Sequence record: OQ603353.1
Length of the DNA: 64,000 nucleotides
Strand: one strand, 5' to 3'
Of this stretch, positions 39,011-61,566 are shown piece after piece. How positions within the stretch are numbered: the stretch's first letter is position 1; every line of letters begins with the position of its first letter. Made by a program: the position numbers and the translations under genes. A model generated the notes under the pieces. The model saw only the letters and a list, made by a program, of their open reading frames with translations. It was not told where the DNA came from and did no database searches.

Positions 39011-39561
39011 TTGCTCCAATGACTGTGCGCGTAGGGGATGAGGAATTCCCTATGCGCGACCTGTTTGCCAGCGAACAGTCGGTGTTTCAGCAGCAGATTG
39101 ATGCAGTTACCTCAGCGTTGCAGGTCACGGAATTCGATCTGCTGCGCCGAGCAGAGACGCTATTCAATCAACGCTTGCAGCACCGATTCTCCAAGTCGCA
39201 GAACCTCAGCTACGAAAAGCGAGTCTACCCTGCTTTCGGTCCAGAAGAATTCATGAAGGTGGCGGCTACTGGCTGGGCAGAAGCAGACAAGTCCATGTGG
39301 ATGGAAGCCGCCCGAAGGGCTTATCTCAACGATGCCATCAATGCGCTCGGTGGGGTGAACTACTCCAACGTTCCTTGCCCGCACCCTGACCCATTCGTCA
39401 CCTACACGCACGGAGCGAACACGGGCGGATGGTCTACCAACGGTGACCGGTACTGGACAGACTTCCACTGCCATGCGTGCGTCAAGAGTTGGCGCATGGA
39501 GGAAACCTACAATCCGAATCGCCATTCGAGGTACGGCCTAGATGAAAGCGCAGCTGTCTGA
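39007..39561 (+). CDS. Hypothetical protein with Cys motifs
   Basis: ATGA overlap with the polymerase; CPHP...CHAC. Confidence 0.65.
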   Translation: MIAPMTVRVGDEEFPMRDLFASEQSVFQQQIDAVTSALQVTEFDLLRRAETLFNQRLQHRFSKSQNLSYEKRVYPAFGPEEFMKVAATGWAEADKSMWMEAARRAYLNDAINALGGVNYSNVPCPHPDPFVTYTHGANTGGWSTNGDRYWTDFHCHACVKSWRMEETYNPNRHSRYGLDESAAV

Positions 39562-40441
39562 AATCTTCCTGAGCGTTGAGGGCGAAGGCCCTTTGCTGGG
39601 ATGCCCCATGTTGTTCATTCGCATGTTCTCATGCAATTTGACGTGTCCTGGGTTCGGTGGGCACGCAGGTAAGCAGCAGTATGAAAGCGTTGCTTCGCTG
39701 AATGACGTGGTGCCTGCTGCTACCGGGTGTGATAGTGCGTATGCGTGGCATCCTTCCTTCAAGAATCTTCGGCAGCCCATCACTGTCGAGGACATGGTGC
39801 AGCAGATCATCGCTGCACTGCCGGGAGGCAAGTTCTTCTACCCAAGCGGCACTCCGATCGTTCTGTGCTGGACGGGCGGCGAGCCCCTCATGTGGCAGCC
39901 TTTCATTCAAGCAGTGATGACGCACCCAGATATGCCACCTGTGGATAGGGTGCTGTTTGAAACCAACGGTACGCTGCTGTGGTCGATGGATCACAACAAT
40001 TGGTCGGGATACCCCACTGTCCAACTCAGCATCAGCCCCAAGCTGACCAATAGTGGGGAGACGTGGGAACGTCGGTACAAGTACAAGGCGTTGATGAGTT
40101 ACGTTGAGCACATTCCGGCTAACGATATTTACCTCAAGTTCGTCAGCAATGGCAGTGAGGAATCCTTCGAGGAAATCAATCGTTGGCTGGATCAGGTCAA
40201 GACTGACGTGCATGCGCAGATGGATATTGCGGGCATTGACGAAGAACACGAAATGTATGATGACTTCCACACGCACATGCACGACCGCAGGATACTGCCC
40301 GTGTACGTGATGCCGGAAGGAGTCTACAAGGAGCAATGTAGGGAAGTGCAAGGCAAGGTTGTGCAAATGTGCATGCAGCACGGGTACAACTTCACCCCAC
40401 GCGCTCATCTTGAACTATTTTCAGAGCTAATTGGGACTTAG
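39542..40441 (+). CDS. queE: QueE-like radical SAM 7-carboxy-7-deazaguanine synthase
   Basis: EIFLSVEGEG..G....FIR...CNLTC...CDS..AW, WTGGEP, FETNGT, SISPKL. Confidence 0.8.
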   Translation: MKAQLSEIFLSVEGEGPLLGCPMLFIRMFSCNLTCPGFGGHAGKQQYESVASLNDVVPAATGCDSAYAWHPSFKNLRQPITVEDMVQQIIAALPGGKFFYPSGTPIVLCWTGGEPLMWQPFIQAVMTHPDMPPVDRVLFETNGTLLWSMDHNNWSGYPTVQLSISPKLTNSGETWERRYKYKALMSYVEHIPANDIYLKFVSNGSEESFEEINRWLDQVKTDVHAQMDIAGIDEEHEMYDDFHTHMHDRRILPVYVMPEGVYKEQCREVQGKVVQMCMQHGYNFTPRAHLELFSELIGT

Positions 40442-40442
40442 T

Positions 40443-40931
40443 ATGAAGCTGTCAATGATCGCCGCCGTGTCAAAGAACGATTGGGTTATCGGGCAGGATG
40501 GTCAGTTGCCTTGGCACATCCCCTCGGACCTTGAGTTCTTCAAGGAGTACACGCAAGGTAAGGCCGTAATCATGGGTAGGCGCACGGCTCAAAGCCTGCG
40601 CCGTGCATTGCCCAAGCGAACCAACGTCGTTATCTCTTCGGGATACGAACGTGAAGGATTCACTACGGTCCGTAATTTCCTTGCAGCCCTAGATGCTGTT
40701 CCTGCTGGTCAGGACGCAGTGATTATCGGTGGTCATCACGTGTACGCCACCGCGATGCCTGTGGTATCCGAAGTGTGCATCAGTTGGGTCCATCACGTTC
40801 GCCCGTCCGCGCCAGATGCTTTCTTCCCTGACACCTTCCGTGACTTCAAATGGAAGGCTATTTCTGAGGAACTCATCCGAGACACGCGTGACGAATTTCC
40901 GTACACTCGGACGATCTACCGCAAGGTGTGA
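40443..40931 (+). CDS. folA: Dihydrofolate reductase
   Basis: IAAV....VIG..G.LPWHIPSDL..FK..T.GK.VIMGR.T..SL..ALPKR.N.V, IIGG, D.FFP. Confidence 0.95.
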   Translation: MKLSMIAAVSKNDWVIGQDGQLPWHIPSDLEFFKEYTQGKAVIMGRRTAQSLRRALPKRTNVVISSGYEREGFTTVRNFLAALDAVPAGQDAVIIGGHHVYATAMPVVSEVCISWVHHVRPSAPDAFFPDTFRDFKWKAISEELIRDTRDEFPYTRTIYRKV

Positions 40932-40940
40932 CGTTCCCTG

Positions 40941-40951
40941 TCCTGTAAATA
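40941..40951 (+). promoter_or_regulatory. Candidate middle promoter TCCTGTAAATA
   Basis: Intergenic, 38 nt before the clamp gene start. Confidence 0.6.
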
Positions 40952-40978
40952 TAGATACACGCAATAACTGGAGAAGTC

Positions 40979-42046
40979 ATGCAGGCTACCGTCGGTGTAA
41001 AAGAACTCACCAAAGCAATCTCGCAAGTAAAGAACCTGACTGGCGCGGAACACATCAGCATGATCGCGGACCCCGCTGGTCTGCACGTGTGCGCGGCTGG
41101 TAACGGTGTCAACGTGTCACTGACGCTTGAAGCCGAAGTGCGTAACAATGGCAAGGTCACTCTGGATCACCTGCTGCTGTCGGGTGTCATCAAGGGACGC
41201 AAGAAGGTCGAAATGACCTTGAAGTCCAGCGACCTGAGCTTCAAGGAAGTGGATGGTCGGAAGTACAGCGGCAACATCGTCGTGCTGCCGTTTGAAGACG
41301 TGATGGTCAACGATGCGTCGAGCAAGCCGATCAAGATCAGTTCGGACGCACAGGCCACCCTGAATCAGGCAGTGGAGTTGGTCGGCCTGACCAACATCTA
41401 CACTGACGATCCGATGTATGTGTGGGTCATCAGCACGAAGAAGGCAACTACGGTTACTTGCTTCGATGACTTCCACATGGCGCATTACCACAACCCGAGC
41501 ATGTCGCTGGGTCAAGTGGAGTTCCAGCTGTCTCTCGCCACGTTCAAGACGCTCAACACCCTGAGCAACGGCAAGAGCTACAAGCTGGAATTGAACGATG
41601 GTACGCTGACGGCATACAACGATGCGTTCAAGGCCAACATGCCACTGACGCAGAGTGAATCGTCGCTGACCCCGGATCAGGTGAAGCAGCTGCTGTCGAA
41701 CCTCAAGACCGATGGTTACTTCGAGGTGGAGCGCGATACCTTCCAGACCATTCTGGAGAACGCCGCTAGTGCGTATGAAGGTAACAATACCCCGTTGACC
41801 ATTTCGTCTAACGCCAAGAAGAAGCTGGAGCTGGCGATCAAGGGCAACTACGTCAACATGCGGGAAGTGCTGCCGAACAAGCACAAGATCAAGAAGCCGC
41901 TACAGCTGGACCCGTCCCTGATGCTGGACATTATGGAGCATGTGGAAACCAAGGAAGTGAAGGTGGAAATCGTCACCGACAAATCGCTGTTCATTCGTCA
42001 AGAACTTGGTGCTGCTACCGTCGTGTACGCGGGCTCCCTGATCTAA
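40979..42046 (+). CDS. DNA polymerase sliding clamp (beta-clamp/DnaN-like)
   Basis: 355 aa with a three-domain beta-clamp-like pattern; TCFDDFHMA resembles the DnaN ATDGHRLA motif; replication context. Confidence 0.65.
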   Translation: MQATVGVKELTKAISQVKNLTGAEHISMIADPAGLHVCAAGNGVNVSLTLEAEVRNNGKVTLDHLLLSGVIKGRKKVEMTLKSSDLSFKEVDGRKYSGNIVVLPFEDVMVNDASSKPIKISSDAQATLNQAVELVGLTNIYTDDPMYVWVISTKKATTVTCFDDFHMAHYHNPSMSLGQVEFQLSLATFKTLNTLSNGKSYKLELNDGTLTAYNDAFKANMPLTQSESSLTPDQVKQLLSNLKTDGYFEVERDTFQTILENAASAYEGNNTPLTISSNAKKKLELAIKGNYVNMREVLPNKHKIKKPLQLDPSLMLDIMEHVETKEVKVEIVTDKSLFIRQELGAATVVYAGSLI

Positions 42047-42047
42047 G

Positions 42048-42449
42048 ATGATAGACCTGTCAGTTGCTACATTCCAAACTGACTGCTTCTATAGGATCGG
42101 TGCTTACTACGTCCTCCTTAACGTACCTTGCGCGCTACCTGTCCACGTCCAACCCAGCCCGCATTTGCAGCTGGGTTGGGTTCGTGTGAATACGCTGCAC
42201 CTCGGTGAAGGCGGGATGCAGGTAGGGTATGCCATCGAGGCTACGGGTAAGGTAAAGCGAGACACCTATTTCCTTTTGGCGGCTAGAAAGTCAGTAGCTA
42301 AGGTTCCGATCAAGGAACTAGAGAAGCAGAAAGGATACCCGGAGCTACGTTACAAGCTACCCGGCATCAAGATTCTGACCACACCCCATACAGTGCTTTT
42401 CCTGAGCACAAAACCTTTAGACATTACGGAACATTTGGACAACCCATGA
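42048..42449 (+). CDS. Hypothetical protein
   Basis: 133-aa ORF tightly packed in the operon. Confidence 0.6.
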   Translation: MIDLSVATFQTDCFYRIGAYYVLLNVPCALPVHVQPSPHLQLGWVRVNTLHLGEGGMQVGYAIEATGKVKRDTYFLLAARKSVAKVPIKELEKQKGYPELRYKLPGIKILTTPHTVLFLSTKPLDITEHLDNP

Positions 42450-43126
42450 GCAAGACTCTTGCTGGAATTCCAGCTACGAAGGAACAGTTGAAGGATGCGT
42501 ACACGGTGATCGTCAATCACCTGCGCAGTAACACCAAGAATCCGGAACTGCTGGCGAATTTTGTTGGCACCGAAGATCGCGCTGTACGCGCTCTGATTGA
42601 AACCTGTCTGAGCGATGATGAAATCTCCAAGCTGCTCGCTCCGATCGTGGCTGTGGAATTCCCGGTCAGCCGTCATAAGCCCAAGGCACGTGGTCAGCGT
42701 GTCCCCGCCGGTTCCGTTACTCAGGGCCCGATCACTGTCAACTCCTGCTGCCCGCACCACCTGATGCCGGTTCGATACCATGCACACGTGGCGTACATTC
42801 CGGGTGACAATGGCGGCGTGCTTGGGCTGTCCAAGCTTGCTCGCATCTGCAAGCTGCTGGGTCGCCGCCCCGTCCTGCAAGAACAGCTTGCCGAAGACAT
42901 TGCGGATGTGCTGTTTCTGACTAACGGCGAAGGCGCATTCCCCTCCCTCGCAAGTGCTGGCGCGGCTGTGTCACTGGTCGGTATGCACACCTGCATGGCC
43001 TGCCGTGGCGTTGAAGAGAACGCGCTCACCTCGGTCACTGCTCTGCGCGGCGACTATTGGGAGCCTGAAATGGAACAGAAGTTCCAGAACTCGGTGCAAG
43101 GTATCAAGACCACCAATCTGCGGTGA
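42446..43126 (+). CDS. folE: GTP cyclohydrolase I
   Basis: SCCPHHLMP, VAYIP, GLSKLAR, RRP.LQE.L, HTCMACRGV. Confidence 0.92.
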   Translation: MSKTLAGIPATKEQLKDAYTVIVNHLRSNTKNPELLANFVGTEDRAVRALIETCLSDDEISKLLAPIVAVEFPVSRHKPKARGQRVPAGSVTQGPITVNSCCPHHLMPVRYHAHVAYIPGDNGGVLGLSKLARICKLLGRRPVLQEQLAEDIADVLFLTNGEGAFPSLASAGAAVSLVGMHTCMACRGVEENALTSVTALRGDYWEPEMEQKFQNSVQGIKTTNLR

Positions 43127-43680
43127 CCAACATGGCCGGTAAGCGCAAGAGCACGAAAGGCATCAAGTTCAAGCCGCAGCCCGTGGCGAAAGCCCCTGCT
43201 GGGTTGGAGGACGATGCAACGTATCAGAAGTACACCCGAGTCGTTAAGAATTGCACCCTTGACATTCCGGCCCTGTACGCCGAGTTGACCACCATCCACT
43301 CCTCGCGTCCCATGCGTACTGCTACTACGCCGGGACCGAAGAAGGCTGCCAAGTTCTCCATGCAAGAGACGGCCCATCGTAGCCGTCTCGTTGAAATGCG
43401 TCAGCTGGCTGCATACGAATTCGCGGTCCTTGATATGGGCCACGGCGCAATTCAGGATCACATTACCCACAAGCACCCCGACCTGATCGGTGGGCGCACT
43501 GTGGATGATCGGAATCGCGCTATGCGTCGTCTGCTACACAAGGGCGAGCGCAGATTGAAGGAATTGGAAGCAGTCATCGAAGCCATTGATTTTGTGATCG
43601 AAGACATTGATAAGGCCGGCTTCTCCTTGCATCGGACCATCGAGGCTTTGGCCATCACCAATAAGGGGGAATACACCTAA
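43123..43680 (+). CDS. Hypothetical protein, possibly UvsY-like recombination mediator
   Basis: Helical; C-terminal IEDIDKAGFSLHRTIE resembles the UvsY C-terminus; adjacent to a UvsW-like helicase. Start could be ATG 43132. Confidence 0.5.
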   Translation: MTNMAGKRKSTKGIKFKPQPVAKAPAGLEDDATYQKYTRVVKNCTLDIPALYAELTTIHSSRPMRTATTPGPKKAAKFSMQETAHRSRLVEMRQLAAYEFAVLDMGHGAIQDHITHKHPDLIGGRTVDDRNRAMRRLLHKGERRLKELEAVIEAIDFVIEDIDKAGFSLHRTIEALAITNKGEYT

Positions 43681-45293
43681 TGGGTAAGAAGATTCCCTCG
43701 GTAACTGTAGTGGCGCTCGACCGCTTCTACGTGCCGGAGAATCGGGTTGATCCTGAGAAGCTAGAGAGGCTGTACCACAAGACGGTGTTCAACGACAACG
43801 GGTGTCGAAAGTGTGAGTTCCGCGAGGAACGACTCACTGACGAATGCCTTGAGTGTGAGAACCTCGTTGGCGACTTCACTTTCTGGAATACCAAAGAAAT
43901 TGATGGGAAGCCGCACATCGGACTTCCTGTTGGGCACCACAAGGCCCTGAGTGAGTTGATGGATGGGTACCGCCTCATCCTAGACGAACGACGTGCCAAG
44001 GGGCGTAAGCTACATCCCGATCTTAGCTTCGACTACAAGCTGCTGCACAAGTTCCAGAAGGGTGCTATCAAAGACCTGAAAAGCACAGGGCACGGTCAGC
44101 TGGAGAGTCCGCCGCGTTCGGGCAAGACGGTCATGGGCACTGCGCTGATTTTCAAGAAGGGCCGAAAGGCCCTAATCCTCGTTCATCAAGAGGATTTGGC
44201 AGAGCAGTTCATCGAAACGTTCCGCAGCAAGAAGCCGAAGTTCACCAACATCGCTGACATTGAGAAGATGGAGAAGCGGGAGTTGGTGGGTATCGCACGT
44301 AAATACGAACAGTTCAAGCAGTACGACATTGCGGTAGCTACCTATCAGACGTTCCTGTCTCCGGGTGGCCGCAAGCTGCTGCGGAAGATTCGCCGCCTGT
44401 TCGGCATTATCATGGTGGATGAGGTGCACCGTGCAGGTGCATCAGGTTACGCCAAGGTCATCAACTCGTTTGAGTCTCGCAGCCGCTACGGACTGTCGGG
44501 TACGATTGAGCGAAAGGATGGCCGTCACGTGCTGCCTCGTTATATCATCGGTCCTGTCGCGCACAAGACTGAGGTGGAGACGATGGCACCGAAGATCGAC
44601 GTGATGGATTCGGGCTTCTCAAGCAACAAGAACTACAATCTCTGGACCTACGCCATGAAGGCGTTGGAAAAGGATGCGAAGCGGCAAGCCTTGATTGTGA
44701 ACGAGGCGATTGCGATGATGAAGTCCGATGGTGGGCGTAGCATCCTGATCCCGGTCACGTTTGTCAATCAGGCAATCCAGATTCGTGATGCGATCAATCG
44801 TAAAATGGGTAAGAAGGTCGCAATCGAATTCACGGGGCGACAGGGCAAGAAGCAACGTCGTCAGATCATTCTGGATGCCCGAGAGGGTAAGTACAAGTGT
44901 GTCATTGCGATGCGCCAGCTGCTTACGGGTGTGAACGTTCCCATCTGGAGTGGCCTGCTAGAGTGCATGCCTATGAACAATCCTCCGAACTTCGTGCAGG
45001 AGTTCAATCGAGTTTGTACGCCGCACCCAAGCAAGCCTGCCCCGGTTGTCAAGTTCCTCATTGATGACTTCTCGCCGTCTCGGAATTGCGTCATCAACAT
45101 GTTTGACGTTCTTGTAAACTACAGTCAGCAACGGAAGGCTAAGAAACAAAAGCCGCTTGACTTCACGCCGCAGGGCCTTGACGTGATCGCACGTCATCGG
45201 GCACTGAAAGGCAACAGGTATCAAGCCAAGTTGAAGAGAGCGGGCCAATGGGATCAGGTAGACAACCCACGCCCGTACCGTACCGATTACTAG
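43680..45293 (+). CDS. SF2 DNA helicase (UvsW-like)
   Basis: SPPRSGKT, MVDEVH, GLSGT, LTGVNVP, QEFNRV. Confidence 0.85.
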   Translation: MGKKIPSVTVVALDRFYVPENRVDPEKLERLYHKTVFNDNGCRKCEFREERLTDECLECENLVGDFTFWNTKEIDGKPHIGLPVGHHKALSELMDGYRLILDERRAKGRKLHPDLSFDYKLLHKFQKGAIKDLKSTGHGQLESPPRSGKTVMGTALIFKKGRKALILVHQEDLAEQFIETFRSKKPKFTNIADIEKMEKRELVGIARKYEQFKQYDIAVATYQTFLSPGGRKLLRKIRRLFGIIMVDEVHRAGASGYAKVINSFESRSRYGLSGTIERKDGRHVLPRYIIGPVAHKTEVETMAPKIDVMDSGFSSNKNYNLWTYAMKALEKDAKRQALIVNEAIAMMKSDGGRSILIPVTFVNQAIQIRDAINRKMGKKVAIEFTGRQGKKQRRQIILDAREGKYKCVIAMRQLLTGVNVPIWSGLLECMPMNNPPNFVQEFNRVCTPHPSKPAPVVKFLIDDFSPSRNCVINMFDVLVNYSQQRKAKKQKPLDFTPQGLDVIARHRALKGNRYQAKLKRAGQWDQVDNPRPYRTDY

Positions 45294-45300
45294 GTGACAA

Positions 45301-45906
45301 GTGAAGCTAACCCTAAAGAAAAGTGAGCTTCGGAATCTGCGGCTGGAGCGAGTGCCCCTGCCGCAGTTCTCCACCCTCGACGTAGACGCGGAACGCATCG
45401 TCTCCAAGTCAGGAAATGGCAAGGTTCGTACCATCAAGCCAAAGGCACAGTTGGACGCGCTCGCCAAATTCGCTCCGCAACTAATTTCAAACTATACGTT
45501 CTGCATCAGCGGCACTGGCACCGACAGCACTGCCAAGTTCGTTGCTGCATGGATGTACGCCCAGCTTCTGACCGCCTACAAAGAGCTTGCCTCCAAAGAG
45601 GCGTTCGCCTTTGGCAAGCCGGTGTGGCACACCCTGACAGGCAGCTTTAAGGATGAGTACCGTGATGAGCGTAGGCATGGCAAATCCAAGCCAAGTGCTT
45701 TCATCCTGACCAACGTTCCATCCGACAGTAGCCAGATCAAGATCGAGAAGCTGCGAGACATTCTGGAACTGTATAACGACGTGCCTCGCATTGTCGTTAC
45801 AACGGGTATGGACCCCGTTGAATTCTTCACCAACAAATTGCACTTCCCCTTGAATGGCGGCATCATGGTTGCCAACAAGAGCCGGCGTGTTACTGAGTCT
45901 ATCTAA
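45301..45906 (+). CDS. Possible degenerate DnaC-like helicase loader
   Basis: GTG start; eroded P-loop (CISGTGTDS) and the ILTNV...LRDILE...IVVTT pattern; directly upstream of DnaB. Confidence 0.45.
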   Translation: MKLTLKKSELRNLRLERVPLPQFSTLDVDAERIVSKSGNGKVRTIKPKAQLDALAKFAPQLISNYTFCISGTGTDSTAKFVAAWMYAQLLTAYKELASKEAFAFGKPVWHTLTGSFKDEYRDERRHGKSKPSAFILTNVPSDSSQIKIEKLRDILELYNDVPRIVVTTGMDPVEFFTNKLHFPLNGGIMVANKSRRVTESI

Positions 45907-45927
45907 GTAGACTCACAGGAGATTCCA

Positions 45928-47591: not shown

Positions 47592-48286
47592 GTACCGAAG
47601 CGGGCGGCGAGGTTACACCGTTTCAGCCTCGTGACCATTCGCCCCTCCTAGCGGAACTAGGAAGTCTGGACGCAGCCGCTCTCATGGAGCGGTTGGGTTC
47701 GGGAAGCATGGTGCGGGCAGATGAGGATGAATACAAGACGCAGAGCAAGCCAGTTCGGTCTCCCAACGTCTACTGGCAGGCTCCAACCGATTGTTGGATT
47801 TTCCTTTCCGGAAAAGCCGCCGATCAATTTGATGTAACAGGGCAGCGCGTCTGGAAGACTGAGGAAGAACGCCAGCAGGCCCTCATGCGCGAGCTAGTCA
47901 TTGACGAACTGGATGTCTCTGACGAAGACAAGGAATCATTTACCAAGACGTTGGAGCAAAGCTCCAACGCGTTCTACAGGGAGCTACTGCGACTGTGTGC
48001 GGTCCAACTCGGATACAACTCCGCGACGGACAAGATCATGCAGACGATGCAACTGCTCCTTGACGATCCGCATTTCACATTGAAGGACGTACAGATCAAG
48101 TCTACCCTACGCGACCTCGTAGACCTCAAGTTCACGGAAGCTATAGCCAAGCAGCTTAGGCTAGGCGACGTTAACGGGGTTTTGAACGCACGCATGGCAG
48201 CCTTGGCTCAATTCATTCCAAGAAATCCTGATGACTCAAAACTGTCTGAGTTGCGCGCACTACTTCAAATGCGCGGACCCGAATAA
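47588..48286 (+). CDS. Hypothetical helical protein, possible terminase small subunit
   Basis: Position directly upstream of TerL only; no diagnostic motif. Confidence 0.5.
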   Translation: MSTEAGGEVTPFQPRDHSPLLAELGSLDAAALMERLGSGSMVRADEDEYKTQSKPVRSPNVYWQAPTDCWIFLSGKAADQFDVTGQRVWKTEEERQQALMRELVIDELDVSDEDKESFTKTLEQSSNAFYRELLRLCAVQLGYNSATDKIMQTMQLLLDDPHFTLKDVQIKSTLRDLVDLKFTEAIAKQLRLGDVNGVLNARMAALAQFIPRNPDDSKLSELRALLQMRGPE

Positions 48287-53474: not shown

Positions 53475-53485
53475 GCGTTTTGGCA

Positions 53486-53496: not shown

Positions 53497-53525
53497 ACCC
53501 CTGACGACCTAGGGATTTTTCTACT

Positions 53526-53933
53526 ATGGATTTGACTGTCGAACTTACTACTGAGCCCTCCCGAAAACCATTCAACGGACCTGTCCAAACGGAGACGTGG
53601 TGCTCAGATGGAGTTCCGGTGGTAGTGGTTTGGTACGCCACCCACCAATATGACGGGAAGTGGTGGGCAATCGTGACGGACATTGAACTTCCGAAACGAT
53701 TCAAGCGCTTCCCTCGCGCAGTCCTGCACGAACTACTGCGCCATGCTATCAACGCGCTAGGCACCGAGTACACTGTGCTCTACCCCTGCGCCCGTAAATT
53801 GCTGCGCCGCGTTGAACCGCTCTACATGCGCAGTCTCATTCAAGGCTACAAGCTCGGCATGCAGCACCTCAAGTTCTCGCCGAATGGTAGCAAGCACCCA
53901 TTTATGATTCTGAGAGAAGCCAATGATTCGTAA
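53526..53933 (+). CDS. Hypothetical protein
   Basis: 135-aa ORF downstream of the promoter motif. Confidence 0.6.
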   Translation: MDLTVELTTEPSRKPFNGPVQTETWCSDGVPVVVVWYATHQYDGKWWAIVTDIELPKRFKRFPRAVLHELLRHAINALGTEYTVLYPCARKLLRRVEPLYMRSLIQGYKLGMQHLKFSPNGSKHPFMILREANDS

Positions 53934-55012: not shown

Positions 55013-55209
55013 GCGATTCCGAACTGTCTCCGTTCTTGGCCCGCAACAGGCCGTACACACCCACCCCTGACCAGCGGGCAGCGATGGATCGCAGCAAGAA
55101 ATTCCATGATCCCCTCCGAGTGCAGAATGGCGCTCTGATTGGTGAAGGCTCTACCAGTCAGCGCTTGGACGAACTCTTACCCTACGGGTCTAGACTCATA
55201 AAGGCATAG
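55009..55209 (+). CDS. Small hypothetical protein
   Basis: ATGA coupling; 66 aa. Confidence 0.55.
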   Translation: MSDSELSPFLARNRPYTPTPDQRAAMDRSKKFHDPLRVQNGALIGEGSTSQRLDELLPYGSRLIKA

Positions 55210-55469
55210 TGATGACGATCCCACACCACACTAGGAAAGACCCTCCCTCGTACAACCCGGTTCTGATCGTGCTGATCTTGGCTCTAATCGCAGTCATCGT
55301 TTACGGCACCTTCATCAAGGAACGTAACGAGGCGCGTCTCAACGAGCACAACAGCCAGCTGTATTCGGAGCTGTGTAAGAAGCAGGGTGGCAACCCTCTG
55401 TACGCAAACGACCCTGACCATCGTACTTGCTTGGTCGGCAACACTCCCATCAACGTAATCCAGCCATGA
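55209..55469 (+). CDS. Small single-pass membrane protein
   Basis: VLIVLILALIAVIVYGTFI helix; C-terminal C..QGG...C motif. Confidence 0.65.
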   Translation: MMTIPHHTRKDPPSYNPVLIVLILALIAVIVYGTFIKERNEARLNEHNSQLYSELCKKQGGNPLYANDPDHRTCLVGNTPINVIQP

Positions 55470-56401
55470 CTCTCGACCTGACCTACCCCAAGTGGTTCGC
55501 TCCCATTGAGGAGCAGATTCGTCACGAACGTGACACCTTCCGATACGATCAATGCGTGGCCGTTCGCAGCCCCTTCGGCGAATACGAGCGCGGCCTCGCC
55601 AGCATCTTCGGGCACGGCGATCCTGTTCCTGACCGTACTGGCACCGGCACCCTGTCGCAGTTCTGCCATCAGATGCGATTCAACATGCACCCGCATACGG
55701 TGCTCGATAGCAGCAGTCCTTACTTCGGACAGAGCCTGCCGGTGTACCCGCTGGTCACCACGAAGAAGGTGCACTTCAAATCGGTGTTCCACGAACTGAT
55801 TTGGATGCTCAAGGGCCTGACCAACATCAAGTACCTGACCGACAACAAGATCACGATTTGGGACGAGTGGGCAGATGAGAATGGCGACCTCGGCCCCGTG
55901 TACGGTAAGCAGTGGCGCGACTTTGCAGGCGTGGATCAGATCACGGAAGTACTGGCGGAAATGAAGCGCAACCCGTACAGCCGCCGTTTGGTCATCAGCG
56001 CGTGGAATCCGCAGGACTTGCCGGAAATGAAGTTGCAGCCGTGCCACATCCTGTTCCAGTTCATCGTGCGCAACGGTCGAATGAACTGCCACTTCTTCAT
56101 GAGGTCGAATGACGCCTTCCTTGGAACGCCCTTCAACATCGCACAGTATGCGATGTTGAATGCGCTGGTCGCCAAGACTGTCGGTGTGCAGCCGGGCGAG
56201 CTTGTGTTGTCGGTAACTGACTTCCACCTGTACTCGAACCATCTGTCTCTGGCCAAGATGCAGCTGACCCGAGAACCGTACCCATATCCCTTCATCAACA
56301 TCAAGACCGCTCGGGACAACCTGTGGGATTACAAGTTTGATGACGTGGAAATCATCGGCTACAAGTCGCACCCTGCAATCAAGGCGGACGTTGCGGTATG
56401 A
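55466..56401 (+). CDS. thyA: Thymidylate synthase
   Basis: DRTGTGT, PLVTTKK, ELIW, LGPVYGKQWR, SRR, LQPCH, RSND.FLG.PFN, HLYSNH. Confidence 0.95.
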   Translation: MTLDLTYPKWFAPIEEQIRHERDTFRYDQCVAVRSPFGEYERGLASIFGHGDPVPDRTGTGTLSQFCHQMRFNMHPHTVLDSSSPYFGQSLPVYPLVTTKKVHFKSVFHELIWMLKGLTNIKYLTDNKITIWDEWADENGDLGPVYGKQWRDFAGVDQITEVLAEMKRNPYSRRLVISAWNPQDLPEMKLQPCHILFQFIVRNGRMNCHFFMRSNDAFLGTPFNIAQYAMLNALVAKTVGVQPGELVLSVTDFHLYSNHLSLAKMQLTREPYPYPFINIKTARDNLWDYKFDDVEIIGYKSHPAIKADVAV

Positions 56402-56712
56402 CGGCAGTTCTCACTGAACTGGACACCCGACTGGCTGAGGCAGGAATCACCCTGTCTCAGTTCGCACAGCGCATTGGCATTCCCGAGCAGGCTATCCATG
56501 CCAACATCGGGAAGGGCTGGTGCATGATTGACCCCTTGATGGCCGCTGCCTTCGCCCGATATTGGGGAACCACCCCTGACTTCTGGCTCGGTATCAGTCA
56601 TCAGCAGAACGTAGAGCGTGCTCGGGAAATCCTCCCGAGGATGACCTTCCCTGACCACACAACTTTGTTGAACGGGCCGCCATGCGATTTCGTAGACATC
56701 AAGATCGGTTAA
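56398..56712 (+). CDS. XRE-family HTH protein resembling HigA antitoxin
   Basis: GITLSQFAQRIGI...GK...I...MA..FARYWGTTPDFWL pattern; no toxin gene adjacent. Confidence 0.65.
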   Translation: MTAVLTELDTRLAEAGITLSQFAQRIGIPEQAIHANIGKGWCMIDPLMAAAFARYWGTTPDFWLGISHQQNVERAREILPRMTFPDHTTLLNGPPCDFVDIKIG

Positions 56713-57044
56713 CTGCGGAAGTCCCTTGTCCAACCACCCACGATGGATTCGCCCGTGTATTCAGCGAGTTCATGCACGAAAGCCTCAAACATTACCTTCG
56801 GGAAGTCGCATTTCCTGCCGCCAATTTCAGTATGCGCAACCGTGTGTTTGCCAACGAGCATGACGCCCTTGGCAACTCCGCGAATCTACAACGAACATTG
56901 ATTCAGACAGTGACCTACGAGTGCCAATCCCTATCGGCCTCAACAGTCATCTACGAATTGGTCCTTATCCCCACTGGCAAGAAAGCGGGATGGAAAGGAT
57001 GGTTGTATGATCGCACCCATAAAGGAGAAACGGTAGCCGCATAA
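56682..57044 (+). CDS. Hypothetical protein (start uncertain, possibly 56772)
   Basis: Fills the gap between the HTH and nuclease genes. Confidence 0.45.
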   Translation: MRFRRHQDRLTAEVPCPTTHDGFARVFSEFMHESLKHYLREVAFPAANFSMRNRVFANEHDALGNSANLQRTLIQTVTYECQSLSASTVIYELVLIPTGKKAGWKGWLYDRTHKGETVAA

Positions 57045-57078
57045 CTCCAGACAGGATTGTCGCTAACCGGTACCCATA

Positions 57079-58074
57079 ATGAAAAAATTCACCGCACCTC
57101 CTGACAATACTTGGGTGCAGCGACAGTTGTTCTCTTGGTGGAAGGAAGCAATCGACCACGGTGGCATGGACCCCGTGGATCAATCACGTAACGAATTCCT
57201 GCGACCTTCCGCCCTCCCTTTCTGTCCCCTCAAAGTCGGCTACAATCGTGTGGTCAATGGCGTGGAGACAGAGCGCTACTCCAGCTTCAACGAAAGCTTC
57301 TACACCTCCATCGGTACAGCGGTTCACGAACTCTTGCAGAACTTCGTGGGCCGCTTGGCCGTTTCCAAAGGCGTAGAACTCAAGGTCGAGACACTCGGCC
57401 ATTGGCACTGCAAGGCATGTGGGCGGAAGCGTAGATTTACCATCTACAAGCCATGCAAGTGCGGAGGCACGCCCGAGTACGAGGAAATTTCTATCCACTG
57501 GCGTACCACCGTTGGCCACATCGACAAGGTGATCCGGGTGGGCAACTGCCTCTTCATTCTTGACTACAAGACCACGGGCTCTATGGCGATTCGCAAGCAT
57601 CGCGCTGGCGCTCCTGCGGGCGAACCTTACTTTCCATATCCAGCCAACCGTGCGCAGATCATGCGTTACGTCGGTCTGTTTGAGAAAGTGTTCGCCAAGG
57701 AGTTTGAACCCGGAGGCCGCTTCGAGGGCACCGTAGTCATGGGCGCAATCTTGGCTTACGTGAGCCGCGAAACTGTCCGTGACGTGGCGTTCGTGTATCT
57801 GCCCGCTACGCGCAAGCGCAAGAAGAAGGAATATCGGAAGGCAGTGCGGGATGACGCCCTGTTTGTCACGATGAAGGAAGCGGTAGCCAAGCGTTCCAAG
57901 AAACTCTTCATTGAGTTGATCGAGGAAAAGCCCTGCGCTGATCGGGATGACTACGATCAGAAGATGCACAGCAGATACGATGAGTGCCCGTTAGTCAACG
58001 TATGCTTTAGACGCCGACAATTACTCAAACAAATCGACAAGGCCCTAAAGGGTCAGATCAAACCCAAGGACTAA
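57079..58074 (+). CDS. Cas4-like PD-(D/E)XK exonuclease
   Basis: RPSALPFCP, GTAVH, GHID, ILDYKT, Q..RY, and C-terminal C...C....C, an Fe-S-like arrangement. Confidence 0.75.
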   Translation: MKKFTAPPDNTWVQRQLFSWWKEAIDHGGMDPVDQSRNEFLRPSALPFCPLKVGYNRVVNGVETERYSSFNESFYTSIGTAVHELLQNFVGRLAVSKGVELKVETLGHWHCKACGRKRRFTIYKPCKCGGTPEYEEISIHWRTTVGHIDKVIRVGNCLFILDYKTTGSMAIRKHRAGAPAGEPYFPYPANRAQIMRYVGLFEKVFAKEFEPGGRFEGTVVMGAILAYVSRETVRDVAFVYLPATRKRKKKEYRKAVRDDALFVTMKEAVAKRSKKLFIELIEEKPCADRDDYDQKMHSRYDECPLVNVCFRRRQLLKQIDKALKGQIKPKD

Positions 58075-58076
58075 CA

Positions 58077-58664
58077 GTGACTAATCCCATCCGCATCGCA
58101 CTCTGCGGCTTGCCGCACTCGGGCAAGGATACCAGCGCAGATATTCTCGTTGATCGCTTCGACTTTGTACGCCTTCGGTTCGCTACTCCAGTCAAGATGG
58201 CTGCCGCAGAAATGTTCGGATGGGATGCTAACGATGAGGAGGACAAGGACAGTCCTCTGATCCGTAACATCGCAGGGGACTACCTGAGCAAGCGCGACAT
58301 TTGGCGCGATATGGCGGAGAACTACATCAAGCCACGTTTCGGGCAGGACTTCTTTGCGCGCGCCCTGACTAAGGAAGCATCGGTCCACTATCACTCTGAC
58401 AACATTGTAGTGACGGACCTGCGCTTCCCCATCGAGGCTATGGTGTTGCGACGTGCTGGCTTTACCGTCATCGAAGTGCAGCGCGAAGACCAGCCCATTG
58501 TGGACGGCCTCCACAATCATCGGGTCGAAATCCAAGACCTTAGCAACTACATCGACTACCAAATTTCCGCACCCTCGGGCTTGCCTCTGGAGAACCTCCA
58601 AGACAAGCTGGGGCAGGCGTTGCAGGGAATCCTCGTAAAGATCAATCCTGTAAATAAACGCTGA
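58077..58664 (+). CDS. Deoxynucleoside monophosphate kinase
   Basis: IALCGLPHSGKDT, FATPVK, VVTDLRFPIE. Confidence 0.85.
   Translation: MTNPIRIALCGLPHSGKDTSADILVDRFDFVRLRFATPVKMAAAEMFGWDANDEEDKDSPLIRNIAGDYLSKRDIWRDMAENYIKPRFGQDFFARALTKEASVHYHSDNIVVTDLRFPIEAMVLRRAGFTVIEVQREDQPIVDGLHNHRVEIQDLSNYIDYQISAPSGLPLENLQDKLGQALQGILVKINPVNKR
58646..58656 (+). promoter_or_regulatory. Candidate middle promoter TCCTGTAAATA
   Basis: Exact third copy, inside the 3' end of the kinase gene, 47 nt before the next start. Confidence 0.55.
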
Positions 58665-58692
58665 GTATTGAAACGTCCCGCTGGAGACATTT

Positions 58693-59637
58693 GTGCATCA
58701 AGGTGATTTTCTGATTATCAAAAACGGGCGCAAAAATGCGCTCGTCAAGATCGTCTCTATCCCGAATGAAGGCGAGTTGGTCGTCCGTCGAGAAGAGAGC
58801 AAGGTTGAAGGTCGTCGGATCACAGAAACGGTGTCCACTGAATCTGTAATTCTCAACCTCGGTCAAAACCCACAGCCGGGATTAGTGTACGGCTGCAAGA
58901 TCGAACCCTACGTTAGCTCCGCCGAGATTGACGGATGGGGCCATATCCATTACTACCGCGACCTAGAGCGTGACGAAAAGAAGACGATCAAACGGGCAGC
59001 TGCGAAGTCGTGGAAGCACCTAAAGAAGTTGGGATTGGTTGCGTTCGCACCCCTGACCATTGAAGTGCGATTGGCGAAGGGTAGCGAAATCGGCTACTAC
59101 AAGATTCACAAGGCACAGGAAACTGACGTGCTGTGCCTCAAGCCCCGTGAGTTCCACTACGATGAACTGGTCCGTCTGTTCTACCATGAGGCAGGCCACG
59201 GCATCCTTGATCGCATGATGCCTGTCGAGTATCGCGCTCGCTGGATCAAGGCGTACACCCACTACACCACGTTGAGCAAATTGGACCCTGACGAAATCCG
59301 TGCCATTCGGGCGCTGGTGGAAGGGACAGGATCGCTCAATGGTGTTGACGGTGTGGACCCTGAGAAGCTCGACCTCTGCATCGACTCGATTCATTCCAAC
59401 TACGGCCTCAAGAAGCGTGACATTGAGGAACTGCTGGAACAGGGATACACACTTGAGGATTACTGGCCGACGCACCCGCTGGACCTAGCGGACAACGAAG
59501 TGCCCCTCACTGATTACGCCAACAAGAACTGGAACGAATTCTTCTGCGAAGCTCTGGCGATGCACATGACGGGCATCCAACTTCCCAAGCGCATTCGGAC
59601 CCTCCTACTCAAAACCATTGAAGCTACCAAGGAGTAA
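58693..59637 (+). CDS. Zincin-type metallopeptidase domain protein
   Basis: FYHEAGHG (HExxH) and distal YANKNWNEFFCE. Confidence 0.65.
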   Translation: MHQGDFLIIKNGRKNALVKIVSIPNEGELVVRREESKVEGRRITETVSTESVILNLGQNPQPGLVYGCKIEPYVSSAEIDGWGHIHYYRDLERDEKKTIKRAAAKSWKHLKKLGLVAFAPLTIEVRLAKGSEIGYYKIHKAQETDVLCLKPREFHYDELVRLFYHEAGHGILDRMMPVEYRARWIKAYTHYTTLSKLDPDEIRAIRALVEGTGSLNGVDGVDPEKLDLCIDSIHSNYGLKKRDIEELLEQGYTLEDYWPTHPLDLADNEVPLTDYANKNWNEFFCEALAMHMTGIQLPKRIRTLLLKTIEATKE

Positions 59638-59641
59638 CGCC

Positions 59642-59857
59642 ATGACCGGGCATCAGTCAAAGCCTGTCGCAACTGCGCTGGACGTGCACCACACTGTCAA
59701 CGCCAAGCTGACCACCACTGCGGAACCGGGTACCATTATTTGGAGTCCGAGGGAAGTCACCCTGAGCCCTACGTTACAGCGTCAGATGGACAACGCCATT
59801 GTGCGCTATCATCAGCTTCCTGAGTGGTACCGACAGGCCGCTGAGAAGAAGGATTGA
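59642..59857 (+). CDS. Small hypothetical protein
   Basis: AAGGAG SD before ATG 59642. Confidence 0.55.
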   Translation: MTGHQSKPVATALDVHHTVNAKLTTTAEPGTIIWSPREVTLSPTLQRQMDNAIVRYHQLPEWYRQAAEKKD

Positions 59858-59859
59858 GA

Positions 59860-61566
59860 ATGAGCAAGAAGAAAACGGGAGGGGCACCGTGGGGAGGGTG
59901 GACTCCCGCCTCTGACTTCCGAAGCGGAGCCAGCTACAACTTTGTTCCTGCGGCAAGTGAGTATTCAAAGCGCGGAGGCGTGCATATCTATGTGCGCTAT
60001 GGTCGAGGTCCGAGCCACGTAACTGTGGTGGATCATGATAGCGACTTCATGCGTATCAAGTGTCCTGACCGGGAACTGCTGATCGTAGCCAATGGTCAGC
60101 GTGCCCATATCTACCGGCCCATGCAGGGCACCTACGACGAGTTCTACAACTTCTCGCCGTTCTGGGAACATTCGTCCGCCGACCTTGAATATGGTTGCGT
60201 GATGACGAACTACACCAGCTACATCGGTAAGGAGAAACGCTCTTCGGGCATCCGTCGCAAGGACTTCCGCTACGGGATCGACCAGCATACCAAGATCATC
60301 GCAGACTCCGGTGGCTTCCAGTTGGTCAAGGGTACGGTGGACTACATCGACCCGAAGGAACTGGTCACGTGGTACAACGACAATGTGGATTGGGGCATGG
60401 TGCTGGATACGCCACTGGCGTCCAACGGCCTTGAAATCTACACTCGGTCCGCCAAGGTGCAGGCTGAGAACACACGCATCATGATGGACAACAAGCGGCC
60501 GGGTCTGGAACTGCTGAACATCATCCACGGTGCGGTCGGCAAGGAAATGGACACCTTCCGCAAGATCGTTGAACGCCCTGACATTGATCGCCTTGCAGTC
60601 GGTGGTATCTACTTCGGTTCCATCCTGTCGAGTATCGACCGCCTGTGCGCCATCATGACAGGTGGGCAGCGATACAAGCACTATCACGCGCTGGGTATCG
60701 CCAACATCACGCAGACGATTCCCTTGATGCGTTTGAGTGGTAGCGACATTGCGCCCCTCATCACCTCGGATAGTAGCTCGCACCTACAGGCAGCTAACGG
60801 GCGTAAGTATTACAAGCCCAACGGCACCGAAGCGCTCCCGGAAGTGCTGTTCTATGCTGACGCAGGTGGCTATCATCCGGGCGGCAATCAGCTGCTCAAC
60901 TGCACGTGCCCCATCTGCTCAGTAGTGAAGTACACCGACGTTCTAAGCATGGTCAACAGCAACACGATCACGCTGCTGCTGGTGTACCACAATCTGTTCT
61001 CGATCCAAATGTTCCAGAAGTCCCTGTACGATCGGGTGGCGGGTGTGCCTGTCGGCGAAGCAAAGGATGCTTTGCGCACCTTGTTCGGTAACTCCAAGGC
61101 CAAGCGCAAGCAGCTGCAAGAGTTCTTCCACACGTTGGACTTTGTTGATATGGTCAAGACCTCGGGCTTGGCTGATGCGCGAAAGGAATTCGCGTTCTAC
61201 TTGCCGAAGACGGACAGTGACACAGGTGCTACCAAGACTCTGTTCTCGGGCATCGAAATGGAAGAGACGGCTGATCCCACCCGAGACTTGGCGATCCTCA
61301 AGAAGTATGAAGACGCCCAGGCTGGTAGGCTCAAGTTGTCCTCTACCCCTGAACGCAAGCCTGCCCCACCGAAGAAAAAGAAGGTGAAGCTGGAAGCTGA
61401 GGAAGGCGCGGCTCCTGAGCCCGAGGTTGTCGAACCTGTCAAGTTGGACAAGGCAGGCCGCAAGAAGAAGAACATCGCCAGCGCGACCAAGATCGGTAAC
61501 AAGGCGATGGGTGTGACTCGAAGCAAACGCCCCGGTAAGCAGAAGGTCAAGAAGAAAAAGAAGTGA
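59860..61566 (+). CDS. tRNA/DNA-guanine transglycosylase-fold protein (aTGT/DpdA-like)
   Basis: ADSGGFQ, MVLD, IHG, AVGG, HALG, SDSSS, and Zn site CTCPIC...HN. Confidence 0.8.
   Translation: MSKKKTGGAPWGGWTPASDFRSGASYNFVPAASEYSKRGGVHIYVRYGRGPSHVTVVDHDSDFMRIKCPDRELLIVANGQRAHIYRPMQGTYDEFYNFSPFWEHSSADLEYGCVMTNYTSYIGKEKRSSGIRRKDFRYGIDQHTKIIADSGGFQLVKGTVDYIDPKELVTWYNDNVDWGMVLDTPLASNGLEIYTRSAKVQAENTRIMMDNKRPGLELLNIIHGAVGKEMDTFRKIVERPDIDRLAVGGIYFGSILSSIDRLCAIMTGGQRYKHYHALGIANITQTIPLMRLSGSDIAPLITSDSSSHLQAANGRKYYKPNGTEALPEVLFYADAGGYHPGGNQLLNCTCPICSVVKYTDVLSMVNSNTITLLLVYHNLFSIQMFQKSLYDRVAGVPVGEAKDALRTLFGNSKAKRKQLQEFFHTLDFVDMVKTSGLADARKEFAFYLPKTDSDTGATKTLFSGIEMEETADPTRDLAILKKYEDAQAGRLKLSSTPERKPAPPKKKKVKLEAEEGAAPEPEVVEPVKLDKAGRKKKNIASATKIGNKAMGVTRSKRPGKQKVKKKKK

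What the first reader, a model, noticed from the sequence alone, without database searches (positions are those of the whole stretch)
39542..61566. Dispersed 7-deazaguanine modification system (QueE, FolE, TGT/DpdA-like)
Seen: queE (39542), folE (42446) and a TGT-fold gene (59860), interleaved with polymerase, clamp and helicase genes rather than clustered. Known: FolE, QueD, QueE and QueC make preQ0, and phage DpdA enzymes exchange it for guanine in DNA to block restriction. QueD and QueC are not in this window. Inference: this phage has hypermodified DNA (dPreQ0, dG+ or a related base) installed at the replisome. Caveat: FolE could instead feed folate synthesis for DHFR/ThyA.
Basis: partly seen in the sequence, partly recalled or inferred. 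Interest (0 to 1): 0.72.

Follow-up and report, generated by a model that had tools for sequence, protein, structure and literature searches.

The report
Phage 7-deazaguanine DNA-modification gene set
This giant Xanthomonas virus carries all five genes needed to swap guanine in its DNA for an archaeosine-type 7-deazaguanine. The base-swapping enzyme comes from a large, unstudied branch of its family. The result is a predicted, not yet measured, anti-restriction DNA modification of a known kind.

Summary
The window is the last 64 kb of jumbo Xanthomonas phage Ep026. It encodes FolE, a divergent but motif-complete QueE, and a 568-aa TGT-fold enzyme with intact catalytic Asp residues and zinc site. 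A QueD-like gene lies 5 kb past the window end, across the junction of the circular record. A Gat-QueC fusion, 34% identical over its full length to the dG+ enzyme of phage 9g, lies 88 kb away.

The pathway is therefore complete, and FolE is not there only for folate. The transglycosylase does not belong to the named phage subfamilies DpdA1-4. It belongs to a large family (273 clusters at E<=1e-30) found in jumbo phages that all carry deazaguanine precursor genes. In phages Motura and BCSR5 it lies inside that gene cluster.

The most likely product is dG+ (or a further decorated form) inserted into DNA after replication. "At the replisome" is unsupported. The DNA target is inferred, not shown. 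Iyer et al. 2021 already predicted such systems in jumbo phages. This scan had already noted the glycosyltransferase beside Gat-QueC in this genome.

The parts
39542..40441 (+). QueE-like radical-SAM enzyme (7-carboxy-7-deazaguanine synthase). Its cluster motif is CX3CX27C, with a ~25-aa insertion between the second and third Cys.
   Evidence: PHROG 2076 at E 1.4e-40 over the full length. Weak NCBIfam QueE hits. 28% identity to the functional 9g QueE, with the insertion visible. Conserved columns in alignment A2.
42446..43126 (+). GTP cyclohydrolase I (FolE), the first step of the preQ0 pathway
   Evidence: PF01227 at E 1.9e-27, above the cut-off. PHROG 2197 at 9e-30. Zinc and catalytic motifs present.
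59860..61566 (+). TGT-superfamily guanine transglycosylase, DpdA-like, 568 aa. It has an N-terminal beta domain (~26-97), a TIM-barrel core with a zinc subdomain (~110-390), a helical C-terminal domain, and a disordered Lys-rich tail (~495-568).
   Evidence: Invariant D149-S-G-G-x-Q, D183, T302-S-D304, C348/C350/C353/H377. Profile against PDB: ArcTGT 6e-10. Foldseek against TGT structures, E 3e-11. Structure model. Basic tail conserved across the family.
40431..40931 (+). Dihydrofolate reductase. This is context only (thymidylate cycle with ThyA at 55427-56401), not part of the deazaguanine pathway.
   Evidence: PF00186 at 1.6e-40; ThyA PF00303 at 1.1e-96

Best explanation
Phage Ep026 and its near-identical relatives PhiXhv-12/-15/-16 and Ep032 encode a complete route from GTP to an archaeosine-type 7-deazaguanine. 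They also encode an enzyme to put that base into DNA.

The proposed steps are:
1. FolE (window) makes dihydroneopterin triphosphate.
2. The QueD-like T-fold enzyme (5 kb beyond the window end) makes CPH4.
3. QueE (window) makes 7-carboxy-7-deazaguanine.
4. Gat-QueC (88 kb away) makes preQ0 and amidates it to the G+ base.
5. The 568-aa TGT-fold protein (window) excises guanine from double-stranded phage DNA after replication. It does this through a covalent Asp304-deoxyribose intermediate and inserts the deazaguanine.

The expected result is dG+ or a close derivative in DNA, which blunts restriction enzymes. A glycosyltransferase and a PIG-L-type deacetylase are coupled to Gat-QueC, so the final base may carry a further group.

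Shown here: the genes, their family membership, intact active-site motifs, and co-occurrence across phages. Inferred: DNA as the target, the identity of the base, timing after replication, and the anti-restriction role.
For: - Family assignments and motifs for FolE, QueE and TGT.
- Same-genome QueD-like and Gat-QueC. Gat-QueC keeps the N-terminal Cys (MCSIFG), the PP-loop (SGGMDST) and the C-terminal CGNCGPC.
- No QueF in the genome. The pathway therefore ends at preQ0/G+, not preQ1/queuosine.
- In phage 9g the same four biosynthetic genes plus DpdA give dG+ in DNA. Replacing QueC by Gat-QueC gives dG+ (PMC6884629).
- Six phage records carry this TGT family (Ep026, Illi-2, GR7B, NCTB, Motura, BCSR5). 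All the relatives have FolE and four of five have QueC.
- In Motura the gene order is QueC-AsnB-like-TGT-x-QueE-x-FolE. In BCSR5 the TGT is two genes from QueE and eight from FolE.
- Relatives with the same TGT carry no tRNA gene (Illi-2, NCTB) or only Met/Arg tRNAs.
- No PUA or other tRNA-binding C-terminal domain is seen. Instead there is a conserved Lys/Arg-rich tail: 12-25 K+R in the last 60 residues of all 24 members.
- The gene sits in a conserved block with a nuclease, a dNMP kinase, a sigma factor and a recombinase in GR7B and Illi-2.
Against: - No measurement of any modified base exists for this phage lineage. The PhiXhv paper does not mention one.
- By sequence the enzyme is closer to tRNA-acting ArcTGT (6e-10) than to bacterial DpdA (0.29).
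- It keeps the CxCxxC...H zinc site, which the reference DpdA1, DpdA2 and DpdA3 sequences lack.
- Ep026's only tRNA gene is tRNA-Asn(GUU), one of the four queuosine-type tRNAs.
- The QueD-like protein has HGY where QueD has HGH. In my alignment it also has Arg at the first zinc-ligand position. It may not be a standard CPH4 synthase; the host QueD could substitute.
- Gat-QueC is not adjacent to the other genes.
Confidence: 0.72

Rival explanations
1. The TGT-fold enzyme modifies tRNA, not DNA. It would insert preQ0/G+ into host tRNAs or into the phage's own tRNA-Asn(GUU), for example at position 34, to tune translation.
For: Best PDB sequence match is archaeosine tRNA-guanine transglycosylase, and the fold matches are all tRNA TGTs. 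The zinc site is retained as in tRNA TGTs. Ep026's single tRNA is Asn(GUU).
Against: Close and distant relatives with the same enzyme have no tRNA genes or only Met/Arg tRNAs. There is no PUA or C-terminal tRNA-binding domain. No QueF, so no preQ1 for a bacterial-type Q34 route. The host already has its own queuosine machinery (general knowledge). The 2023 survey reports a DpdA-family protein in every phage known to carry a 7-deazaguanine in its DNA (PMC10516641), and 9g DpdA did not complement E. coli tgt (PMC6884629).
Confidence: 0.1
2. The modified base is made as a nucleotide and incorporated by the phage polymerase during replication, which is the reader's 'at the replisome'. The TGT-fold protein would act on a free nucleotide or have another role.
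For: A dNMP kinase (58077-58664; PF21448, PHROG 139) lies two genes upstream of the TGT, and a family-A polymerase lies next to QueE.
Against: dNMP kinases are ordinary in large lytic phages. No phosphoribosyl- or deoxyribosyl-transferase for the free base was found in the window. The TGT keeps the nucleophile and pocket residues of polymer-acting transglycosylases. The literature places all known deazaguanine DNA modifications after replication (PMC10516641).
Confidence: 0.06
3. FolE and the QueD-like T-fold enzyme serve pterin/folate supply for the phage DHFR-ThyA cycle, and the deazaguanine genes are relics.
For: DHFR lies between QueE and FolE, and ThyA is nearby. The QueD-like protein has non-canonical metal ligands.
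Against: QueE, Gat-QueC and TGT all keep their catalytic motifs and are conserved at 97-100% among five isolates and across genera. FolE and QueD alone do not make folate. In Motura and BCSR5, FolE sits in the deazaguanine cluster.
Confidence: 0.03

Closest known systems
Enterobacteria phage 9g dG+ system (DpdA1 + FolE, QueD, QueE, Gat-QueC; Hutinet et al. 2019, PMC6884629)
   Same: The same five functions. Gat-QueC is 34% identical over its full length. QueE and FolE fall in the same PHROGs as the 9g genes. In 9g the genes also lie next to the DNA polymerase and clamp.
   Different: 9g has one compact operon; here the genes are spread over three places. The 9g DpdA1 is 317 aa, lacks the CxCxxC zinc motif, and is not detectably related at profile level (hhalign probability 5%; 1.6 bits with the A1 profile). 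QueE here has a 25-aa insertion inside the Cys motif.
Vibrio phage nt-1 DpdA2 (inserts preQ0 into DNA; PMC10516641)
   Same: Closest named DpdA subfamily: hhalign probability 94%, E 9e-8 over the barrel; Foldseek E 1e-10. Similar length (464 aa).
   Different: Similarity stops before the zinc subdomain, which nt-1 DpdA2 lacks. It belongs to a different PHROG (10773, no hit for the window protein). Only 18.8 bits with the family profile, against 112-611 bits for true family members.
Achromobacter phage Motura 'tRNA guanine transglycosylase' cluster, predicted by Iyer et al. 2021 (PMC7824862) to put a deazaguanine into jumbo-phage DNA
   Same: Same transglycosylase family: 27% identity, E 3e-21; 191 bits with the A1 profile; TM 0.78. 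QueD-like is 75% identical. Also a ~220 kb jumbo phage.
   Different: Motura has a compact QueC-AsnB-like-TGT-QueE-FolE cluster with a separate QueC and amidotransferase. Ep026 has a fused Gat-QueC far from the rest, coupled to a deacetylase and a glycosyltransferase. Neither phage has been tested experimentally, as far as the library searched shows.
Archaeosine tRNA-guanine transglycosylase (ArcTGT, PDB 1IQ8/1J2B)
   Same: Best solved-structure relative by sequence profile (6e-10). DSGxFQ, LDxP, DS(A/S)S and CxCxxC...H(N)L motifs align.
   Different: ArcTGT has C-terminal C1-C3/PUA domains that hold tRNA. This protein instead has a helical domain plus a Lys-rich tail, and an extra N-terminal beta domain.
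Bacterial DpdA of the Dpd restriction-modification system (PDB 7UI4; Pfam PF23859)
   Same: TGT fold, zinc site, DNA as substrate.
   Different: Barely detectable by sequence: E 0.29, and no PF23859 hit in Ep026. No DpdB/DpdC partners were seen.

Membership tests
TGT superfamily (tRNA/DNA guanine transglycosylases) | TIM-barrel TGT fold | tested here: met
   AlphaFold model with pLDDT 76. Foldseek top 50 hits are all TGT/ArcTGT structures, E 3e-11 to 5e-8.
TGT superfamily (tRNA/DNA guanine transglycosylases) | Substrate-binding Asp in DSGGFQ, second Asp in LD, nucleophile Asp in (T/S)SD, and zinc site CxCxxC...H | tested here: met
   D149, D183, D304, C348, C350, C353 and H377 are invariant in 24 homologues. 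They align to the ArcTGT motifs.
Phage DpdA1 (9g/CAjan type) | Sequence membership (PHROG 887/7068; detectable similarity to 9g DpdA) | tested here: not met
   No PHROG hit at 1e-3. hhalign probability 5%. 1.6 bits with the A1 profile.
Phage DpdA2 (nt-1/VH7D type) | Sequence membership (PHROG 10773) | tested here: not met
   No PHROG hit. Remote homology only: probability 94% over the barrel, 18.8 bits. The zinc motif is present here and absent in nt-1 DpdA2.
Phage DpdA3 (phiST/CP220 type) | Sequence membership (PHROG 20335/19058; ~260 aa) | tested here: not met
   The PHROG 19058 search finds CP220 at 7e-183 but nothing in Ep026, NCTB or BCSR5. hhalign probability 12%. Negative bit scores.
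Archaeal-virus DpdA4 (DUF6610, PF20314) | Match to PF20314 | tested here: not met
   A Pfam scan of all 24 family members returned only PF01702.
DpdA in the functional sense (DNA-guanine transglycosylase for 7-deazaguanines) | Co-occurrence and clustering with preQ0-pathway genes in viral genomes | tested here: met
   All five relatives have FolE and four of five have QueC. Motura and BCSR5 have the gene inside the cluster.
DpdA in the functional sense (DNA-guanine transglycosylase for 7-deazaguanines) | Exchanges guanine in DNA, not tRNA | not testable with these tools
   Needs an enzyme assay or nucleoside mass spectrometry. Public runs holding the phage are kept as contigs only, so no base-calling signature could be read.
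QueE (7-carboxy-7-deazaguanine synthase) | Radical-SAM three-Cys cluster motif and QueE-type N-terminal and TGGEP/ETNG motifs | tested here: met
   C31, C35 and C63 (CX3CX27C) are conserved. F25, R27, T111-P115, E140, N142, S165 and K167 are invariant. PHROG 2076 at 1.4e-40. The scores are below the NCBIfam equivalog cut-offs and there is no Pfam Radical_SAM hit for this copy.
Gat-QueC (G+ synthase fusion) | N-terminal class-II amidotransferase with Cys2, fused to a QueC PP-loop domain with a C-terminal Cys cluster | tested here: met
   GATase_7 6e-8 plus QueC 4e-49 in one 507-aa ORF. MCSIFG, SGGMDST and CGNCGPC align with the validated 9g Gat-QueC at E 2e-75. The gene lies outside the window (Ep026 91552-93075, minus strand).
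QueD (CPH4 synthase) | PTPS T-fold with CxxxHGH and three zinc-ligand His | tested here: inconclusive
   PF01242 at 4e-16, above the cut-off. Best PDB match is a CPH4 synthase at 5e-5. The motif is CxxxHGY, and the first His aligns to Arg. The score is below the NCBIfam QueD cut-off.
FolE (GTP cyclohydrolase I) | PF01227 above threshold with the Cys/His zinc site | tested here: met
   96 bits against a cut-off of 27. CCPHH and HTCMAC present. The N-terminal ~90 aa are divergent.

The most novel reading that the evidence does not exclude
The 568-aa enzyme represents a further, zinc-retaining clade of viral DNA-guanine transglycosylases, outside DpdA1-4 and with hundreds of members in uncultured large phages. 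In Ep026 the inserted G+/preQ0-type base would then be extended by the glycosyltransferase and PIG-L-type deacetylase that are translationally coupled to Gat-QueC. That would give an amino-sugar-bearing 7-deazaguanine, a DNA base not yet described.
Probability: 0.3. Interest if true: 0.85.

Novelty: new variant of a known kind. Interest (0 to 1): 0.5.

Why it matters
[quoted passage not shown] A deazaguanine genome would explain resistance to host restriction. It would also affect cloning, restriction mapping and nanopore sequencing of these phages.

The GenBank annotations hide the system. QueE is labelled GTP 3',8-cyclase or PFL-activating enzyme, Gat-QueC is labelled a GlmS-like aminotransferase, and the transglycosylase is labelled hypothetical.

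The transglycosylase family is large (273 clusters at 50% identity with E<=1e-30) and untested. It lies structurally between tRNA TGTs and the named DpdA subfamilies. It is therefore a good case for asking how these enzymes switched from tRNA to DNA.

Tried and rejected
- **SWIM-like protein as a TGT partner.** I tested whether the small SWIM-like protein just downstream (61563-61967) is a subunit of the transglycosylase. Complex prediction gave 'no answer'. In Motura and BCSR5 its homologue sits beside the sigma-factor gene, not beside the TGT. I dropped the idea.
- **tRNA-Asn(GUU) as a clue to a tRNA target.** Ep026's single tRNA is Asn(GUU), but relatives with the same enzyme lack such tRNAs. 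I treat it as a coincidence and keep it as evidence for the rival.
- **Split terminase.** I suspected the large terminase was split. It is intact here (746 aa). PhiXhv-16 has a 443-aa insertion instead.
- **Base-calling signature of modification.** I looked for one in public reads. All holders are kept as assembled contigs.
- **Published DpdA subfamily tables.** The supplement of the 2023 paper is not held or has no entry for NCTB, GR7B or Motura. The 2019 table lists phage NCTB with FolE, QueD, QueE and QueC but no DpdA.
- **Pfam DpdA (PF23859).** It does not detect even 9g or nt-1 DpdA, so its silence here is uninformative.
- **Protein atlas search on the glycosyltransferase.** I sent that protein to no other remote tool. 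I used only local alignment and the relatives' annotation for it.


Full report
**What the window is.** The 5 kb stretch of the window that I queried (39000-44000) is 100% identical to Xanthomonas phage Ep026 (OQ603353.1; 227,420 bp; circular; unannotated, 'unverified') and to Erwinia phage Ep032. It is 96-97% identical to the jumbo phages PhiXhv-12, -15 and -16 of Xanthomonas hortorum pv. vitians. After assembling the record from fetched pieces, the window equals record positions 163421-227420 exactly. The window therefore ends at the arbitrary end of a circular record, and genes 'after' it lie at the record's start.

**Check of the observation.** All three genes are real ORFs on the + strand.
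- FolE (42446-43126) passes Pfam's threshold: PF01227, 1.9e-27. It shows the Cys/His zinc motifs.
- The putative queE (39542-40441) has no Pfam hit. It matches PHROG 2076 'QueE-like radical SAM' at 1.4e-40 end to end and several NCBIfam QueE models weakly.
  - It has more than 2200 full-length homologues, many named 7-carboxy-7-deazaguanine synthase by their sources.
  - In an alignment with 19 of these and the QueE proteins of 9g, Motura and BCSR5, C31 and C63 are invariant and C35 nearly so. The TGGEP, ETNG and SPK motifs are invariant.
  - Against 9g QueE, which restores queuosine in E. coli delta-queE (PMC6884629), the only oddity is a ~25-residue insertion between the second and third cluster cysteines, CX3CX27C instead of CX3CX2C. 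The insertion is typical of this large subfamily.
- The TGT-fold gene (ATG at 59860) has no Pfam or PHROG hit of its own.
  - NCBIfam gives weak ArcTGT/TGT hits.
  - 17 of 24 homologues hit PF01702.
  - A profile of the family finds ArcTGT at 6e-10 and bacterial TGTs at about 1e-3 in the PDB.
  - The AlphaFold model (pLDDT 76) matches only TGT structures (E 3e-11 onward).
  - The DSGGFQ Asp, the LD Asp, the TSD nucleophile Asp304 and the CxCxxC...H zinc site are invariant in the family.

**The missing genes.**
- In Ep026 a PTPS/QueD-family gene lies at record 2618-3082 (PF01242 4e-16). That is 5.05 kb downstream of the TGT gene across the record junction.
- A 507-aa ORF at 91552-93075 on the minus strand joins a class-II glutamine amidotransferase to QueC (4e-49). 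It aligns over its whole length with Gat-QueC of phage 9g (34% identity, E 2e-75). It keeps the N-terminal Cys, the PP-loop and the C-terminal Cys cluster.
- No QueF is present, so the pathway does not continue to preQ1 or queuosine.
- The same genes are in PhiXhv-16. There they are annotated as 'QueD-like', 'L-glutamine-D-fructose-6-phosphate aminotransferase' (the label that 9g Gat-QueC also carries), and 'hypothetical protein'.
- The PhiXhv paper does not mention deazaguanine.

**Caveat on QueD.** The QueD-like protein has HGY where QueD has HGH. In my four-sequence alignment it has Arg at the first zinc-ligand position. Motura has the same variant (75% identity). I score QueD membership as inconclusive. 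The host's QueD could also supply CPH4.

**Which transglycosylase?**
- The protein is not DpdA1. There is no PHROG 887/7068 hit, the hhalign probability against 9g is 5%, and the family profile gives 1.6 bits.
- It is not DpdA3. PHROG 19058 finds CP220 at 7e-183 but nothing in Ep026, NCTB or BCSR5, and the hhalign probability against phiST is 12%.
- It is not DpdA4: no family member hits PF20314.
- It is only a remote relative of DpdA2. Against nt-1 the probability is 94% over the barrel and the profile score 18.8 bits. Foldseek gives E 1e-10, ranked below all family members.
- All members I checked keep the CxCxxC motif. The 9g, nt-1, phiST and CP220 reference proteins do not.
- True family members score 112-611 bits. 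They come from Vibrio phages GR7B and GR11A, nine Pseudomonas putida vB_PpuM phages, phage NCTB, Achromobacter phage Motura and Burkholderia phage BCSR5, all 195-258 kb.
- A profile search of 1.84 billion cluster representatives finds 273 clusters at E<=1e-30, mostly full-length proteins of 450-600 aa.
- Family-specific features are an N-terminal beta domain, a C-terminal helical domain, and a disordered Lys/Arg-rich tail conserved in all 24 aligned members.

**Link to the deazaguanine pathway.**
- Every relative examined has FolE, and four of five have one or two QueC genes. BCSR5 has none, so it may stop at CDG.
- In Motura the order is QueC, AsnB-like amidotransferase, TGT, x, QueE, x, FolE. 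In BCSR5 the TGT is followed by QueE and FolE within 5 kb.
- Hutinet's 2019 table lists NCTB with FolE, QueD, QueE and QueC and no DpdA. The NCTB member of this family (E 2e-111 with the profile) fills that gap.
- Iyer et al. 2021 had already stated that a few jumbo phages such as Motura hold a deazaguanine synthesis system and a transglycosylase for its incorporation into DNA. The kind of system is therefore predicted in the literature, but I found no experimental work on this clade.

**DNA or tRNA?**
- For DNA:
  - The precedent of all tested phage systems.
  - The absence of tRNA genes, or of GUN tRNAs, in relatives.
  - No PUA-type domain.
  - The basic tail.
  - Conserved placement among nuclease, dNMP kinase, sigma factor and recombinase genes.
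- For tRNA:
  - Greater similarity to ArcTGT than to bacterial DpdA.
  - The retained zinc site.
  - Ep026's single tRNA being Asn(GUU).
- I put DNA at roughly 0.8 of the total, with about 0.72 for the full statement.

**Surroundings of Gat-QueC (outside the window).**
- Gat-QueC overlaps by 4 nt a PIG-L-family deacetylase (PF02585, above threshold). That in turn overlaps a 369-aa protein annotated 'glycoside transferase' in PhiXhv-16, and a GFO/IDH/MocA oxidoreductase follows.
- The 369-aa protein has a homologue in BCSR5 directly upstream of that phage's TGT gene. Both carry an EX7E/EX7D motif of GT-B type.
- Two unknown proteins upstream of Gat-QueC have homologues flanking the QueC pair of GR7B.
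- Earlier notes of this scan (s1-156292 on this very gene; s1-158499 and others on PA5oct-type phages) propose a sugar-bearing deazaguanine. My two observations agree with that lead but do not prove it.

**Verdict.** The system is a new variant of the known phage 7-deazaguanine DNA-modification kind. It has the same biosynthetic enzymes as 9g, scattered over the genome, and a transglycosylase from a large uncharacterised zinc-retaining clade.

Noticed in passing
Ep026 record 129733-129808 (outside the window): The phage's only tRNA gene is tRNA-Asn(GUU), one of the four queuosine-type tRNAs. Relatives with the same TGT family have no tRNA or only Met/Arg tRNAs.
   Followed up: yes
Ep026 record 2618-3082 (L017:1465-1929): The QueD-like T-fold protein has CxxxHGY instead of CxxxHGH, and Arg aligns to the first zinc-ligand His. 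Motura's protein (75% identical) shares the same variant motif.
   Followed up: partly
Ep026 record 88989-93075, minus strand (L018:4990-9076): Gat-QueC is translationally coupled to a PIG-L-type deacetylase, a 369-aa GT-B-like putative glycosyltransferase and a GFO/IDH/MocA oxidoreductase. The glycosyltransferase has a homologue directly upstream of the TGT-like gene of Burkholderia phage BCSR5. This scan noted the gene before (s1-156292).
   Followed up: partly
Ep026 record 93868-95789, minus strand (L018:9869-11790): Two proteins of unknown family (347 and 291 aa) upstream of Gat-QueC have homologues (GR7B_00115 and GR7B_00119) flanking the tandem QueC genes of Vibrio phage GR7B. GR7B and Illi-2 follow their QueC pairs with several unknown enzymes, including in GR7B a lysine-2,3-aminomutase-like radical-SAM protein.
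   Followed up: partly
Ep026 record 95779-98246, minus strand (L018:11780-14247): In the same minus-strand gene run there is a 545-aa double GNAT/FemAB-like acyltransferase and a leucyl/phenylalanyl-tRNA-protein-transferase-like gene (PF03588, 1.9e-30). Their role is unknown.
   Followed up: no
window 61563-61967: A small protein with a SWIM-like CxC...CxH motif overlaps the end of the TGT gene by 4 nt. It is conserved in GR7B, Illi-2, NCTB, Motura and BCSR5. In Motura and BCSR5 it lies next to the sigma-factor gene (window 61964-62980 here), so it probably goes with sigma rather than with the TGT.
   Followed up: yes
window 58077-58664: A T4 gp1-like deoxynucleoside monophosphate kinase (PF21448; PHROG 139 at 1e-37) lies two genes upstream of the transglycosylase.
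   Followed up: no
window 48231-50471 versus L001:1-3582: The large terminase is 746 aa here. PhiXhv-16's copy is 1193 aa because of a 443-aa insertion between residues 202 and 646, probably an intein or homing element.
   Followed up: partly
GenBank records PV764601-PV764603: QueE is annotated as 'GTP 3',8-cyclase' or 'pyruvate formate-lyase-activating enzyme', Gat-QueC as 'L-glutamine-D-fructose-6-phosphate aminotransferase', and the transglycosylase as 'hypothetical protein'. The modification system is therefore invisible in the public annotation.
   Followed up: yes
window 57000-62000: Near-identical sequence (40-76% of sampled words) stands in many public runs of varied origin: honey, drinking water, wastewater and sediment metagenomes, and several organism-labelled RNA and DNA runs. 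This phage lineage is therefore widespread.
   Followed up: no
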